Shown: in pieces, positions 29,316 through 57,347 of the stretch
Layout of the letters: each line of letters opens with the position of its first letter
Position numbering within the stretch: the first letter of the stretch is position 1
From: Macrostomum hystrix
Lineage: Eukaryota > Animalia > Platyhelminthes
Reading direction: 5' to 3'
NCBI GenBank assembly: GCA_950097015.1
Contig: CATNEN010000014.1
Coordinates: forward strand, 2,108,001 to 2,172,000
DNA length: 64,000 bases
The notes under the pieces: generated by a model
Seen by the model: the letters and a program-made list of their open reading frames with translations, nothing else
Databases searched by the model: none
What the model was told of the DNA's origin: nothing
Made by a program: the position numbers and the translations under genes

Positions 29316-29714
29316 CTGTCTTGTAATTCCCAGTTTTTAACTCTAGTCTCGCACTGTCGCATATTGCGAATTTCTTAATTAAACTAGTTATGTTCTCAAT
29401 CGAGTTGTTCAGACTGTGCCCGCAATATTCCTGTTTGTAAATGTTCAAACCTCTTCCAGGTGTTTGTAAGCCATTCTAGCAAGACTCAGTGTTATCTGTT
29501 TGTTCTCTGGTTCTGGGTTGTAGAAATGAGTCACAAATAGATCGCTGTTTAAATCCATTTTTGTTGCCAAGCGCACATTAATACTACATTACTGTGCGGC
29601 CATTCGTTTTTCTAAACCGTCAGTTCCTATTGTTATTGATTTATTGTAGTAAGAAGCGATCAGCTTGTGTTATCAGTATAATTGACAAGTGAGTATTGTG
29701 TTAAATGTCATGCA

Positions 29715-29720
29715 TTGCAG
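29715..29720 (+). promoter_or_regulatory. Candidate SL trans-splice acceptor at the start of the DDX55 reading frame
   Basis: ttgcag|CTA GCC AAG in phase 0; no in-frame ATG before the upstream stop TAA at 29679-29681. Confidence 0.6.
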
Positions 29721-29738
29721 CTAGCCAAGTCTCTAAAT

Positions 29739-52600: not shown

Positions 52601-53802
52601 CGACCGCCTGTTCGCCCTGAACTGCCACCTGAGCGCCTTCTACACCCCGGAGGAGTTCTTCCTCGGCCACCGGCCGGTGCCCTTAGCCCAGTGCCGCCTG
52701 CCTGAGTTTAATCCCACGGCCTACGCCAGCGCAGATCCCAGGCTCGCCAGCCAGCAGGCCGTTGATGCCTGGCCGTCGGAGGAGCTGCGCCAGCTGCTGC
52801 TGCCACCGGGCACCAGCCAGGCTGCTCCCCTTCTGGCCCTTCTAGTGGGCTACCCGGCTAGCGGCAAGTCCACTCTGTGCCGCCAGCTCGCCAGCCTGCT
52901 GCGTCGTCAGAGCCATCGGACCATCAGCGTCGTCAGCCGCGACCAGCTGGGCACCTGGCAGCGCTGCGTGCAGTCTGCCGAGACCGCTCTGAGAGCCACC
53001 GCCGACCCCATTGTGCTGGTAGGACATTGTTCAATTGTGTGGTCATTCTAGGCATCTTGATCCTCATGGCTTATTGCGTAGGAGGTTCTAGAAAGTACGA
53101 AGGGGGAAAATATTTTTTGCTTGCTTTTCAGATTTCAAAGGTTTCCCCTGTTGCTAAGCCCTGACTGCCTGCCTGGCAAGTGCCTGCAGGCCTTCGCTTT
53201 ATTTTTACATGATTTTCTTGGAACTTGTGCAATCCGATTGTCATTGCCATGCCTTTCCATTTTTCGTTTCTTTAATCTTAACTTTAACTCGAGCATAAGA
53301 TAGGACCATATTAAACCCATTTGTTAGCATTCCCTGATCCCTATACTAAGTCAAGAGCTTTCCCAGATCCAAATATCCCCATAAAAAGAGGCAAATTATT
53401 TTCTAATGGCAGCTAATATTGATCATCATGGCTCATTGCCGCGGCTTCCAGGTAGACAACACCAACATCGACGCGGATAGTCGCCAGCGCTACGTGGAGC
53501 TGGCCAGGCGGATAAGCGGCAGCCGCATCGTCTGCCTGCCCATGCAGTGCAGCCTGGCTCAGTGTCTGCATAATGAACGGTTTCGGCGCATCCTCGAGGA
53601 GGAGGCGGAGGCTGAGGCCCCAGGAGCTGGCAGGAAGCGCCGGGAGCCGGTTGGCGAGATGGTGTTCAACCAGATGCGCGCCAAGTTCAGCGAGCCGCAG
53701 CTAATGGAAGGCTTTGCCAGCATCGTCCGGGTGCCGTTTGTCCCCAGGTTTGAGCGGCCTGAACACTTCAGGCTGTACTGCGAGTACCTCATGGAGAAGT
53801 AG
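49646..53802 (+). CDS. PNKP: Bifunctional polynucleotide 3'-phosphatase/5'-kinase, 4 exons (~672 aa)
   Basis: Exons 49646-50665, 51514-51709, 52567-53018 and 53452-53802. N-terminal FHA, GFDMDGTLI, SNQKG, RKPCSGMW, YVGDAAGR, DFSCSDRLFALN, GYPASGKST, DNTN and EPQLMEGF. Confidence 0.95.
50717..50792 (+). ncRNA. C/D-box snoRNA-like unit (copy B), PNKP intron 1
   Basis: GCC-a-CTGATGA...AATTGCTACTCTTGA...ATGATGA...CTGA-GGC. Confidence 0.6.
50892..50979 (+). ncRNA. C/D-box snoRNA-like unit (copy C), PNKP intron 1
   Basis: AGCTGGCCT-ATGATGA (50901-07)...CTGA (50967-70)-GGCCTAGCT; terminal stem, internal D'/C'. Confidence 0.72.
51145..51365 (+). repeat. Purine-rich ~15 bp tandem repeat (GAGATGAGACACGGGA-like), PNKP intron 1
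   Basis: Tandem periodicity. Confidence 0.85.
51848..51925 (+). ncRNA. C/D-box snoRNA-like unit (copy D), PNKP intron 2
   Basis: ATGATGA at 51852-58, AATTGCTACTCTTGA, second ATGATGA, CTGA at 51920-23. Confidence 0.68.
51975..52335 (+). repeat. Minisatellite, 24 bp unit (CACAATATCCCATCTCCCTTCAAC), PNKP intron 2
   Basis: Tandem 24-bp period. Confidence 0.92.
52390..52468 (+). ncRNA. C/D-box snoRNA-like unit (copy E), PNKP intron 2
   Basis: GGC-GATGATTA...AATTGCTACTCTTGA...ATGATGA...CTGA-GCC. Confidence 0.62.
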
Positions 53803-53839
53803 AATACTCAGGGAGAAAGACAAACAACTAGGGGAAGAG

Positions 53840-54230
53840 GAACAAGAATGGGTGCGCGAAGGAGTTGAGGAATGTGCGGAAGAGGTAGAATAATGTGCTG
53901 AAGAGGTAGAGGAAGAGGTAGAAGAATGGGCGGAAGAGGTAGAGGAAGGGGTAGAAGAAAGGGCGGAAGAGGTAGAGGAAGGGGTAGAAGAATGTGCGGA
54001 AGAGGTAGAGGAAGGGGTAGAAGAAAGGGCGGAAGAGGTAGAGGAAGGGGTAGAAGAATGTGCGAAAGAGGTAGAGGAAGGGGTAGAAGAATGGGCGGAA
54101 GAGGTAGAGGAAGGAATAGAAGAATGTGCGGAAGAGGTAGAGGAAGGGATAGAAGAATGTGCGAAAGAGGTAGAGGAAGGGGTAGAAGAATGGGCGGAAG
54201 AGGCAGAGGAAGGCGGAAGAAGGAGAGGAA
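53840..54230 (+). repeat. Purine-rich 33 bp minisatellite after the PNKP stop
   Basis: GGAAGAGGTAGAGGAAGGGGTAGAAGAATGTGC tandem units. Confidence 0.92.
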
Positions 54231-54694
54231 AGAGGATGATAATTATGATATTGCTGTTTTAACATGTCAATCAGTCATTTTTTGCCCCAGCATTTCTGCT
54301 GTTGTAACCCTGTTCACTACTATATGCCTTCAGATTAAATTTTGATTTGTTTTATTCCTAATTGAGCTCACTTGGCCTTGGTTGAGTCCACAAGGCAATT
54401 TTTCAACTTGCTAGCTAATGATATGCTAATGATATGCTAATGATATGCTAATGATATGTTAATGATATGCTAATGATATGTTATCTGTAATGCAAAACTC
54501 CGGTTGCGCTCCGCACATTTAAATGCATATTTTGATTGCACTTTCTGCTGCTGTCAGTTCATTAACCTTCCCTGCATTTCATGTCATGATGCTTCTACAT
54601 TGAGCAGACTTCAGTAGCTTCTTTTTAGCGCGTAATAATACTACGCACTTCTTGTTGTACTTTTAAATAGTTGACGTTTAACGTCCATTATAAC

Positions 54695-54997
54695 CTAAGG
54701 GTTTTAGCCTAGTCATTTTGGTCACGATTATAAGGTTGGTGGTTCGTCCGACTCCACTGGAAGAATTTGTGTCTATTATTAAGACACTTGGCTCTGCATT
54801 GCTTCAGTTCACCCAGCTGACAGATGAGATGGGTACCAGTATTGGCTGGGGTAATTGAAGGTGGGTGTGTCGTTCCCACTGTCCATGGACTGAACAGCCG
54901 TACGCAGCGTTTAGACGCACTGCTTGGCTCAATAGCTTCGGCTGTGCCGTAGACGGCAGATGTAGCCTAACTGGGGCAGGTGTGATCAATTATTATT
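54695..54997 (+). mobile_element. tRNA-derived SINE family B, degenerate copy
   Basis: Colinear with 62598-62885 (AAGACACTT..CTCTGCATTGCTTCAGTTCACCCAG...GGGTACCAG...TTGAAGGTGGGTGTG). Confidence 0.75.
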
Positions 54998-55042
54998 AGC
55001 TCATTTTAAGCAGCCACCGTGTACTTTCTATTGCTCACCCCA

Positions 55043-55048
55043 TTGCAG
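55043..55048 (+). promoter_or_regulatory. Candidate SL trans-splice acceptor at the start of the ATP5S reading frame
   Basis: ccattgcag|CCT CCT GGC in phase 0; no in-frame ATG in ORF 55019-55243. Confidence 0.6.
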
Positions 55049-56102
55049 CCTCCTGGCCCAGCCTGCAAGCGACAGCTGCTGCTCTTAGCAACGGGCTGGC
55101 AGCCGCAGCTGCACTGCCGCCGTGGCTACTTCGACTGGCTGGTGGGCGTCTGGAACAAGGTGGACCGCGACCGGATAAAGCAGGTGAGTCTGGAAAGATC
55201 TGACAAGATCTGGAAAGATCTGACAAGATCTGGAAAGATCTGACAAGATCTGGAAAGATCTGACAAGATCTGGAAAGATCTGACAAGATCTGGAAAGATC
55301 TGACAAGATCTGGAAAGATCTGACAAGATCTGGAAAGATCTGACAAGATCTGGAAAGATCTGGAAAGATCTGACAAGATCTGGAAAGATCTGACAAGATC
55401 TGGAAAGATCTGGAAAGATCTGGAAAGATCTGGAAAGATCTGGAAAGATCTGACAAGATCTGGAAAGATCTGACAAGATCTGGAAAGATCTGACAAGATC
55501 TGGAAAGATCTGACAAGATCTGGAAAGATCTGACAAGATCTGACAAGATCTGGAAAGATCTGACAAGATCTGACAAGATCTGACAGATGACGCTCCCTCC
55601 ATGTCTGACGCTCCACTTCCAGATCGGCCCAGATCGAGCGTGCGCCGAGTGGCTATTGCGCAATGGTGCGTCCGTGGTCTGGGCTGACGACCGCGGTGCC
55701 ACCAGCGACTACAACCGGCTGGGCGCGGTGCCCGCCGACCAGCGCATCCAGGAGATCTTGGCTGACACGGCCTCGGTCAGCGCAGCCGGATTTCCTTACC
55801 TGCTGGGCCTCAGCCGACTGCGCTCCATGCAGCTCAGGAACTGCGCCTACCTGAGCGACTCAGCTTTCGCCTACCTGGCCGATCACTGCCGCCTGGAGCG
55901 CCTCCTGGTGGCCCGGTGCCCGCTGGTGACGCCGCGCGGCGTGCTTGAGATGGCCCGCATCGATGGCCTGCGCAGCCTGAGCCTCAGCCAGCTGGCCAGC
56001 GTCGACAACGCGGAGTGGGTCCAGTTGAAGGACCAGCTGGCCGCTCGGCTTCGTTCCGACTGCCGTCTGGAGTTCGACTCCGAGGACTCAGCTGAGGGCT
56101 AA
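55049..56102 (+). CDS. ATP5S: ATP synthase subunit s / DMAC2L (mitochondrial), 2 exons, no genomic ATG
   Basis: Exons 55049-55183 and 55623-56102. RRGYFDWLVGVWNKVDRDRIKQ|IGPDRACAEWLLRNGASV matches family FWGWLNAVFNKVDxxRI..GPDRAASEWLLRCGA; C-terminal leucine-rich repeats. Confidence 0.9.
55188..55586 (+). repeat. Minisatellite of AGATCTGGAA/AGATCTGACA 10-mers, ATP5S intron
   Basis: Begins within the donor region (gtgagtctggaaagatc). Confidence 0.95.
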
Positions 56103-56534
56103 ATGGTTTCTAAGAATGTTTACTTCTTAGAACGGCATAAATCATTGTCAGTGTATTATACTCATCAAGCACTAAAAATATTTTTTTTTATCTATTCTGT
56201 GAAGTATGTTTATTATATAGTTTAAAGTATTATCTTCAGGTATCCTAGTTAGTCTCATTATATATCGAAGTATTTCCTTAAAATTTTAAGTCTTTTTAAC
56301 AAGGACTTTTTTATCCGGTTTTCCATCAATTTTCATTGAAAATATTTGTAGTTCAGATTCAGTTATTCAGATTTAAAAGGTTTCCGCTACTTCTGAGACT
56401 TTCGTCGGTGCCTGCTGGCTTTCGCTTTATTTTACATGGACCTTGTGCAGTGTTTTTGTCAGTACCAAGCCTTTCATATATTTGTTTATTCTTTACTTAA
56501 CACAAGCGTAAGATAAGTGAGTACTATAGGACAA

Positions 56535-56765
56535 AACACTCCCAGATCCCCTGATTAAACCTAGAAGATCCCCAAATTGAGCAATAAACATTCCCAGATC
56601 CCCAGATTGAGCAGTAAACATTCCCAGATCCTCAGATTGAGCAGTAAACATTCCCAGATCCCCAGATTGAGCAATAAACATTCCCAGATCCCCAGATTGA
56701 GCAATAAACATTCCCAGATCCCCAGATTGAGCAATAAACATTCCCAGATCCTCAGATTGAGCAGA
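56535..56765 (+). repeat. Minisatellite, 30 bp unit (TTCCCAGATCCCCAGATTGAGCAATAAACA)
   Basis: Tandem 30-bp period ending ~20 nt before acceptor tttttgcag (56783). Confidence 0.9.
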
Positions 56766-56840
56766 TTTTCATAATTTTTGCAGGCATTTGCCCGACCCTG
56801 AAGTATTCTGTCTCACGTGTAAGCGAGCCCGGCCTATTTT

Positions 56841-57347
56841 ATGTCGGCCACAACAGCAGCCTTCAACGGTTCCCAGCCTCACCATCGGACACATCGCTGC
56901 CAGTCAGTCGGTGGAAGCGGCAGCGGCTTCATCCGAGTCAGTGGCTTGCCCCTCCAAGCTCGCCAAGTTGACCTGGAGCTCGCCTTCTCGCGATTCGGCC
57001 GAGTTCTCGACGTTTGGTCGCCGTCATCGCCGTCGGCCTCCTCATCTTCGCTGGCTGTCATCGTCGAGATGGCGGATCAGCGGGACGCGGCGGAGGCCGT
57101 TGCTCACCTCGACGGGCAGCCGCTGTGCGGAGCCCGCGCCCGACTGGAGCTGCAGCTGGACAAACGGCTGCTTCTCAAGCCTCGCTGCTACGACTGCGGA
57201 GCCAGGGGCCACCTGGCCTACGGCTGTCCGTGGACCGCCGCTGCCACCAACGGAGACACCTGGACCTCTGCTGAACAGCTGGCTGATGATGTACAACGAA
57301 AACTGGCGTTAAGATCAGCCACCTCAGTCGAGCGAATGATGAGCTAG
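56841..57347 (+). CDS. Divergent SRSF7-like RRM + CCHC zinc-knuckle protein lacking an RS domain
   Basis: IRVSGLP...LELAFSRFGRVLDVW...VEMADQRDAAEAVAHLDGQPLCGARARLEL...CYDCGARGHLAYGC aligns to the neighbouring SRSF7; intronless. Confidence 0.8.
   Translation: MSATTAAFNGSQPHHRTHRCQSVGGSGSGFIRVSGLPLQARQVDLELAFSRFGRVLDVWSPSSPSASSSSLAVIVEMADQRDAAEAVAHLDGQPLCGARARLELQLDKRLLLKPRCYDCGARGHLAYGCPWTAAATNGDTWTSAEQLADDVQRKLALRSATSVERMMS

What the first reader, a model, noticed from the sequence alone, without database searches (positions are those of the whole stretch)
55019..55183. ATP5S/DMAC2L also lacks an ATG; an SL AUG would complete a mitochondrial presequence
Seen: the acceptor ccattgcag| (55048) is in phase 0 and there is no in-frame ATG. 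Adding a leader AUG gives MPPGPACKRQLLLLATGWQPQLHCRR|GYFDW, a basic, acid-free peptide like a mitochondrial targeting signal just ahead of the conserved region. Inference: a second SL-AUG-dependent gene in the same 64 kb, which suggests this initiation mode is common here and could gate expression after transcription.
Basis: partly seen in the sequence, partly recalled or inferred. Interest (0 to 1): 0.72.

Follow-up and report, generated by a model that had tools for sequence, protein, structure and literature searches.

The report
Spliced leader supplies DMAC2L start codon
In this flatworm (Macrostomum hystrix) the gene for the mitochondrial ATP-synthase factor ATP5S/DMAC2L has no start codon in its own DNA, and transcript assemblies show the trans-spliced leader, which ends in AUG, joined in frame in front of its first codon; this mechanism has been known in flatworms since 2006, so it is one more confirmed case.

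Summary

- **Gene model:** exon 1 is 55049-55183, exon 2 is 55623-56099, and the stop is TAA at 56100-56102. It encodes an ATP5S/DMAC2L homologue.
- **No start codon of its own:** there is no ATG between the in-frame stop at 55007 and the conserved block, and none in any frame of exon 1.
- **RNA evidence:** in three runs of one study, a roughly 1-kb contig lies on 55048-55183 without a difference. It is preceded by 24 letters of the Macrostomum spliced leader (SL) and followed by exon 2. The RNA therefore reads ...UUGCAUG|CCUCCU, which translates as M-P-P-G. No contig joins an upstream exon to 55049.
- **SL genes:** the genome's SL RNA genes end in ATG followed directly by GTAAG.
- **Conservation:** the M. 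lignano orthologue starts at the same codon. Its apparent genomic ATG is most likely an artefact of polishing that assembly with RNA-seq.
- **Presequence:** the 27-residue N-terminus is basic and acid-free, and has arginine at -2 before the residue that aligns with the mature bovine N-terminus. This makes a mitochondrial presequence plausible, but it is not shown.
- **Not tested:** "gating" of expression.

The mechanism is known (Cheng et al. 2006). This scan has already reported such cases on other DNA of this genome (POP5, TAF10, ADCK1, LTV1). Interest is low.

The parts
55007..55009 (+). In-frame TAA in the outron. It closes the reading frame upstream of the acceptor.
   Evidence: 13 codons without ATG lie between it and 55049
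55040..55048 (+). Trans-splice acceptor ccattgcag|. It fits the published Macrostomum SL-acceptor motif [T/C]TNCAG.
   Evidence: motif from PMC8629364; the SL-carrying contigs begin to match at 55048
55049..55183 (+). Coding exon 1, 45 codons in phase 0, with no ATG in any frame. The first 26 residues are the presequence-like part; residues 27-44 are the conserved N-terminal block YFDWLVGVWNKVDRDRIK.
   Evidence: contigs of X4, X5 and X6 cover it with 0 differences; 94 of 135 bases are identical to M. lignano, with one in-frame 24-base indel
55184..55622 (+). Phase-0 intron (gtgagt...ccacttccag) filled by a 20-bp tandem array at 55189-55582.
   Evidence: for the array; the loose end behind 55183 in X5 and X6 reads the first 30 letters of 55623 onwards
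55623..56102 (+). Coding exon 2 (159 codons) plus the stop TAA at 56100-56102. This is the leucine-rich-repeat body of ATP5S/DMAC2L.
   Evidence: bovine ATP synthase subunit s (3dze), E 2.3e-15 over chain residues 21-158; the named hits are ATP synthase subunit s of insects, and the best hit is the M. lignano orthologue at 73% identity
56103..56473 (+). 3' untranslated region. Its end near 56418-56473 is inferred only from contig lengths.
   Evidence: table 8: 796, 814 and 851 contig letters lie beyond exon 1 (X5, X6, X4); collinearity with the genome is assumed

Best explanation
The window is from Macrostomum hystrix. The two-exon gene at 55049-56102 encodes the orthologue of ATP5S/DMAC2L (ATP synthase subunit s, also called coupling factor B). 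Its pre-mRNA has no usable start codon. The 35-nt spliced leader, whose last three letters are AUG, is trans-spliced to the acceptor at 55048/55049, and the outron with its in-frame stop is removed. The mature mRNA then reads leader-AUG followed directly by CCU CCU GGC. The first, and only suitable, AUG a scanning ribosome meets therefore comes from the leader and opens a 205-codon frame. Shown here: the leader-to-exon junction in RNA, the frame, the lack of any other in-frame AUG ahead of the conserved region, and the leader genes with ATG|GTAAG. Inferred: that translation starts at that AUG, and that M plus 26 residues form a cleavable mitochondrial presequence, cut after ...RRG and before YFDW. 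The gene probably lies in a same-strand cluster PNKP > DMAC2L > RRM-CCHC gene that may be an SL-resolved operon.
For: Identity of the genome: G000 has 220,453,370 bases in 42 contigs, exactly the figures for the M. hystrix assembly in Table 1 of PMC10468722.

Junction in RNA: in X4, X5 and X6 one contig each (1011, 956 and 974 letters; depth 53-78) matches 55048-55183 with 0 differences. Each has a 24-letter loose end before 55048 that ends ...TTTATTGCAT. In X5 and X6 the listed loose end behind 55183 equals the start of exon 2. The G at 55048 serves both as the leader's last letter and as the G of the acceptor AG.

Leader genes: those 24 letters plus G occur 28 times exactly in G000, none of them in the window. 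They include arrays with a period of about 11.6 kb. In bona fide copies (L001, L006) they are preceded by CGGTCTCTTA and followed by GTAAG and a U-rich Sm-like site. This equals the published 35-nt M. lignano SL (PMC8629364).

Frame.

Homology.

Conservation: the M. lignano orthologue is annotated 'partial' and starts at the same proline codon. DNA similarity starts at the acceptor: 39% identity upstream against 70% in exon 1.

Literature: the flatworm SL 3'-terminal AUG acts as initiator (Cheng et al. 2006, J Biol Chem 281:733, as summarised in PMC9851317, and PMC12582326). The M. hystrix genome paper itself notes that the SL likely holds the final ATG start codon.
Against: All RNA evidence consists of assembled contigs from one study (P2). 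Contigs drop rare isoforms, so a minor cis-spliced form with an upstream ATG exon cannot be excluded. The run records do not say that the runs are RNA; this is inferred from the missing intron and the leader. No ribosome-profiling or protein N-terminal data exist here, so use of the leader AUG in translation is inferred. The context of that AUG is weak (U at -3, C at +4). The presequence-like part has no helical hydrophobic moment above shuffles, and the M. lignano counterpart holds two acidic residues.
Confidence: 0.88

Rival explanations
1. A cis-spliced upstream micro-exon with its own ATG is joined to 55049, and the SL form is a by-product.
For: Another follow-up in this genome found such a micro-exon for one claimed case (note s1-316733). 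Contigs cannot show rare forms.
Against: In all three runs the only contig on exon 1 carries SL letters before 55048. No joint to 55049 and no other loose end there is listed. Depth is zero over 54941-55036. The M. lignano annotation, built from SL-trimmed reads, starts at the same codon.
Confidence: 0.05
2. Exon 1 is untranslated leader, and the protein starts at the first genomic in-frame ATG (55827) or at a non-AUG codon.
For: There is no genomic ATG before 55827, and the leader AUG sits in a weak context.
Against: Exon 1 residues 27-44 align with residues 2-19 of the solved bovine protein, collinear with exon 2, and with the same block in insects. Exon 1 is kept in frame against M. lignano, including a 24-base indel. 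A start at 55827 would remove 68 residues of exon 2 that align with the solved structure. An out-of-frame ATG at 55663 comes first.
Confidence: 0.03
3. The ancestral gene had its own ATG at this codon, as the M. lignano assembly seems to show (gcATG|CCT), and M. hystrix recently swapped it for an acceptor. Dependence on the SL would then be young, not conserved.
For: L007 and L008 read TGCATG directly before the first proline codon and have no AG there.
Against: Those six letters are the last six of the SL. At the next gene, three M. lignano copies show a graded series: cTTGCATGG, tttttATGG and tttttcTGG. The Mlig_3_7 assembly was polished with Pilon using RNA-seq (PMC5730564). A protein from an older annotation reads ISFQ before PAIF, which suits ...CAG|CCT. 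The depositors marked the protein as partial.
Confidence: 0.1

Closest known systems
Flatworm mRNAs that take their initiator AUG from the spliced leader (Cheng, Cohen, Ndegwa and Davis 2006; Schistosoma mansoni)
   Same: The leader ends in AUG followed by the GU donor. It is joined in frame to an ORF that has no AUG of its own ahead of conserved sequence, and the outron is removed.
   Different: The species (a free-living macrostomorph) and the gene differ. Here only the RNA junction is shown, not translation. In S. mansoni the AUG was reported in frame in 28% of trans-spliced transcripts and needed by more than 40 cDNAs (PMC9851317); no such count exists for M. hystrix.
Bovine and human ATP5S/DMAC2L (ATP synthase subunit s, coupling factor B; PDB 3dze)
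   Same: Exon 1 residues 27-44 and the whole of exon 2 are collinear with chain residues 2-158. There is an N-terminal extension of similar length, free of acidic residues, and an arginine two residues before the aligned mature N-terminus.
   Different: Only about 30-37% identity to animal homologues. Pfam gives no hit. The start codon is not encoded by the gene.
[quoted passage not shown]
   Same: Same-strand neighbours PNKP, DMAC2L and an RRM-CCHC gene, in the same order in M. lignano. The downstream gene is trans-spliced. The spacer is mostly repeats, about 600 nt once repeats are subtracted, which is under their 1-kb threshold.
   Different: No polycistronic precursor was seen. Trans-splicing of the third gene was not tested.

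Membership tests
SL-AUG-initiated flatworm mRNA | The organism's spliced leader ends in AUG, followed directly by the GU donor | tested here: met
   L001 and L006 read ...TTATTGCATG|GTAAG. There are 28 exact copies in G000.
SL-AUG-initiated flatworm mRNA | The leader is joined to the gene's 5' acceptor in RNA | tested here: met
   A 24-letter SL loose end lies before 55048 in the contigs of X4, X5 and X6, with 0 differences over exon 1. One study only.
SL-AUG-initiated flatworm mRNA | The leader AUG is in frame with the conserved ORF, with no stop between | tested here: met
   AUG|CCU CCU GGC; 45 open codons to the donor, then exon 2 in phase 0.
SL-AUG-initiated flatworm mRNA | The mature mRNA has no other in-frame AUG ahead of the conserved region | tested here: met
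   No ATG in exon 1. The first in-frame ATG is at 55827. The 35-nt leader holds no other ATG, as read directly.
SL-AUG-initiated flatworm mRNA | Translation really starts at the leader AUG | not testable with these tools
   Needs ribosome profiling, N-terminal proteomics or a reporter.
ATP5S/DMAC2L (ATP synthase subunit s) | Sequence similarity to the solved protein along its length | tested here: met
   3dze: E 2.3e-15 for exon 2, chain residues 21-158. Exon 1 residues 27-44 align with chain residues 2-19 (weak alone at E 0.65, but the top hit and collinear).
ATP5S/DMAC2L (ATP synthase subunit s) | The nearest named relatives are subunit s, not F-box/LRR proteins | tested here: met
   All named full-length hits are ATP synthase subunit s. 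FBXL2 matches only through repeated LRR units.
ATP5S/DMAC2L (ATP synthase subunit s) | Single copy in the genome, as expected of the orthologue | tested here: met
   One match in G000, the window's own.
ATP5S/DMAC2L (ATP synthase subunit s) | Cleavable mitochondrial presequence and mitochondrial location | tested here: inconclusive
   Net charge +4, no D/E, R at -2. Hydrophobic moment is not above shuffles. No predictor or experiment was available.
SL-resolved operon | Same-strand neighbours with a repeat-adjusted spacer under 1 kb and a trans-spliced downstream gene | tested here: met
   The PNKP stop is at 53800-53802 and the acceptor at 55048, 1246 nt apart. About 640 nt of this are tandem or dispersed repeats.
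SL-resolved operon | A polycistronic precursor RNA spans both genes | tested here: inconclusive
   No contig covers 54941-55036 in X4-X6. Contigs cannot show rare precursors.

The most novel reading that the evidence does not exclude
Reliance on the leader's AUG is old and fixed for this gene: the same first codon is used in M. hystrix and M. lignano. It may also be favoured among nuclear genes for mitochondrial proteins, because their loosely constrained presequences tolerate a start placed wherever an acceptor falls. Earlier notes of this scan list ADCK1, COQ7, a mitochondrial tyrosyl-tRNA synthetase and a neurolysin-type peptidase beside DMAC2L. Because the intron is also in phase 0, leader addition at the exon-2 acceptor (55622) would give an in-frame protein without a presequence. 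Choice of acceptor could therefore switch the protein between mitochondrial and non-mitochondrial forms.
Probability: 0.1. Interest if true: 0.5.

Novelty: new member of a known kind. Interest (0 to 1): 0.22.

Why it matters
Practically, gene finders that demand a genomic ATG will truncate, mis-start or mark as 'partial' genes such as this one. The M. lignano orthologue is deposited as partial, and an older prediction fuses it to its neighbours. Annotation of Macrostomum genomes should therefore add the leader's AUG at in-frame trans-splice sites. Biologically, it adds a conserved mitochondrial ATP-synthase factor to the genes whose protein output depends wholly on trans-splicing. It does not change what is known about the mechanism. 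The side observation that one reference assembly carries leader letters at acceptor sites matters for anyone comparing start codons or splice motifs in that genus.

Tried and rejected
- **Pfam:** the scan of both exons gave no family, even at E up to 1.
- **Rfam:** 53800-56900 gave only two sub-threshold mir-750-like matches inside the intron's tandem array, taken as chance. The SL gene locus gave nothing useful, since no flatworm SL family matched.
- **Leader in the window:** a search allowing up to 3 mismatches found nothing, so the leader letters in the contigs cannot come from nearby DNA.
- **Run X1 (second study):** it laid nothing on exon 1, only pieces of the dispersed repeat. There is therefore no second independent study.
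- **Hydrophobic moment:** the value for the presequence-like part is not above shuffles.
- **Cheng et al. 2006:** the primary paper is not held, so it is cited through papers that summarise it.
- **Older M. lignano protein P0015:** its DNA is not on record.
- **M. lignano's own ATG:** considered as real and rejected as the most likely reading; see the rival explanations.
- **Joined model:** exon 1 and exon 2 were never joined into one query. All searches went exon by exon, by reference, so the full-length joined protein was not searched or folded.

Full report
**What is there**

Around the finding lies a two-exon gene on the + strand.
- Exon 1 runs from 55049, after the acceptor ccattgcag|, to 55183, before the donor gtgagt.
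- The intron, 55184-55622, is almost filled by a 20-bp tandem array.
- Exon 2 runs from 55623 to the stop TAA at 56100-56102.
- Both splice sites are in phase 0.

- The peptide is as written.
- The first in-frame stop upstream is TAA at 55007-55009, with no ATG in the 13 codons between it and 55049.
- Exon 1 has no ATG in any frame.
- The first in-frame ATG is at 55827, far inside the conserved part, and an out-of-frame ATG at 55663 precedes it.

**What the gene is**
- Exon 2 matches bovine mitochondrial ATP synthase subunit s (coupling factor B, PDB 3dze) at E 2.3e-15 over chain residues 21-158.
- Exon 1 residues 27-44 align with chain residues 2-19. This match is weak on its own, but it is the top hit and collinear with the exon-2 match.
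- The word search gives the M. lignano orthologue at 73% identity. Its other named hits are insect proteins called ATP synthase subunit s.
- Pfam is blank.
- The genome holds one copy.
- The exons were searched separately, by reference. The joined model was not built or searched.

**Which organism**

G000 has 220,453,370 bases in 42 contigs. These are the figures for the Macrostomum hystrix assembly in PMC10468722. Earlier notes of this scan name the same species.

**The decisive test**

I laid contigs of four public runs on 54485-55188.
- In three runs of one study (X4, X5, X6), one contig each (1011, 956 and 974 letters) matches 55048-55183 without a difference.
- Before 55048 each carries 24 letters that end ...TTTATTGCAT.
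- Behind 55183 the listed loose ends (X5 and X6) read the first 30 letters of exon 2.
- The contigs therefore lack the intron and are RNA-derived.
- The G at 55048 is shared between the leader's last letter and the acceptor AG, so the RNA reads ...UUGCAUG then CCU CCU GGC. The AUG is in frame.
- No contig joins another exon to 55049, and depth is zero over 54941-55036.
- That all three contigs stop after exactly 24 leader letters is what a 31-mer assembly graph would give at a sequence shared by thousands of transcripts. This point is my inference.
- The fourth run (X1, another study) has nothing on exon 1, so the evidence rests on one study.

**Where the leader comes from**
- The 25 letters occur 28 times exactly in G000 and not at all in the window, even allowing 3 mismatches.
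- Several contigs hold arrays with a period of about 11.6 kb.
- In L001 and L006 the sequence is preceded by CGGTCTCTTA and followed by GTAAG and a U-rich Sm-like site.
- This is the published 35-nt M. lignano leader with its GTAAG donor (PMC8629364).
- The acceptor TTGCAG| fits that paper's SL-acceptor motif [T/C]TNCAG.

**Mechanism**

Shown:
- The pre-mRNA has no start codon ahead of the conserved region.
- Trans-splicing removes the outron with its in-frame stop.
- It places the leader's terminal AUG directly before codon 2.

Inferred:
- Ribosomes start at that AUG. It is the first AUG of the mRNA, about 32 nt from the cap, and gives a 205-residue precursor.
- The context of the AUG is weak (U at -3, C at +4).

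**The presequence**

The part ahead of YFDW is M plus 26 residues.

For a presequence:
- It has four K/R and no D/E, against 14% D/E in the rest of the protein (p about 0.02).
- It ends in R-R-G. This puts arginine at -2 relative to the residue that aligns with the first residue after the initial Met of the bovine crystal construct. That this residue is the mature N-terminus is my recollection.
- Most homologues have an arginine at the same place.

Against:
- The helical hydrophobic moment is not above shuffles.
- The M. lignano extension has two acidic residues.

A mitochondrial presequence is therefore plausible but not shown.

**Conservation**
- The M. lignano orthologue (P0001, deposited as 'partial') begins at the same proline codon.
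- DNA similarity between the species starts at the acceptor: 41 of 105 bases identical upstream against 94 of 135 in exon 1, with one 24-base in-frame indel.

At first sight the M. lignano assembly has its own ATG, since L007 and L008 read TGCATG|CCT with no AG. I think this is an artefact, for four reasons:
- The six letters are the leader's last six.
- At the next gene, three copies read cTTGCATGG, tttttATGG and tttttcTGG, a graded series.
- The assembly was polished with Pilon using RNA-seq (PMC5730564). The M. hystrix assembly was polished with DNA reads only.
- A protein from an older annotation reads ISFQ before PAIF, which suits ...CAG|CCT.

If so, dependence on the leader's AUG is shared by both species.

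**Surroundings**
- The last coding ORF of PNKP ends at 53802 on the same strand.
- An RRM-CCHC gene with its own ATG at 56841 follows, behind a possible acceptor at 56783.
- The order PNKP, DMAC2L, RRM gene is kept in two M. lignano loci.
- Of the 1246 nt between the PNKP stop and the acceptor, about 640 are tandem arrays and a dispersed 200-bp repeat.
- By the operational criterion of PMC8629364 this would count as an operon, but no precursor RNA was seen.

**What is known already**
- All flatworm leaders end in AUG (PMC12582326).
- Cheng et al. 2006 showed its use as initiator. They found it in frame in 28% of S. mansoni trans-spliced transcripts and needed by more than 40 cDNAs (as told in PMC9851317).
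- The M. hystrix genome paper remarks that the leader likely holds the final ATG start codon.
- This scan has already reported such cases on other DNA of the same genome: POP5, TAF10, ADCK1 and LTV1.

This is therefore a correct reading, one more member of a known kind, and of low interest. 'Gating' of expression has no support here: only the trans-spliced form is seen, and trans-splicing affects about a fifth of this species' genes constitutively.

Noticed in passing
L007:3995-4000, L008:2495-2500, L009:2492-2500 (M. lignano assembly GCA_002269645.1): The last 2-7 letters of the spliced leader stand in the genome sequence in place of the AG acceptor at trans-splice sites, in graded form between copies (TGCATG; cTTGCATGG, tttttATGG, tttttcTGG). 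The assembly was polished with RNA-seq (PMC5730564). This is probably a systematic artefact that creates false genomic ATGs and hides acceptors.
   Followed up: partly
window 54748-54958: A dispersed repeat of about 200 bp lies about 90 bp upstream of the trans-splice acceptor. There are 1851 first-look candidates in the genome, and the 40 scored are mostly 80-83% identical. Many RNA contigs match it at 90-95% with high depth. No Rfam or tRNA-like match was found. It is possibly a SINE or MITE.
   Followed up: partly
L002-L005 (G000 C3 and C7); further places: Some exact copies of the leader are not followed by GT but by unrelated sequence, and four near-copies end in GCATA instead of GCATG. 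They may be SL pseudogenes or retro-copies of trans-spliced mRNAs.
   Followed up: no
window 56783-57347: An RRM plus CCHC zinc-knuckle gene (SRSF7-like) on the + strand has its own ATG at 56841, behind a TTGCAG| acceptor at 56783. If the leader is added there, its AUG opens a 6-codon upstream ORF (AUG GCA UUU GCC CGA CCC UGA). A 30-bp tandem array (56566-56763) fills most of the spacer to DMAC2L.
   Followed up: no
window 29713-29722: The DDX55 site flagged by the same reader has the same acceptor letters, cATTGCAG|, as DMAC2L. I read the sequence only; no RNA test was made here.
   Followed up: no
window 55622/55623: The exon-2 acceptor is also in phase 0, so leader addition there would give an in-frame protein without the presequence and the first conserved block.
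   Followed up: no
P0015 (UniRef A0A1I8FY02, M. lignano): An older gene prediction fuses DMAC2L with the two following RRM-CCHC genes into one 594-residue protein. This shows how tightly packed, start-codon-less genes mislead gene finders.
   Followed up: no
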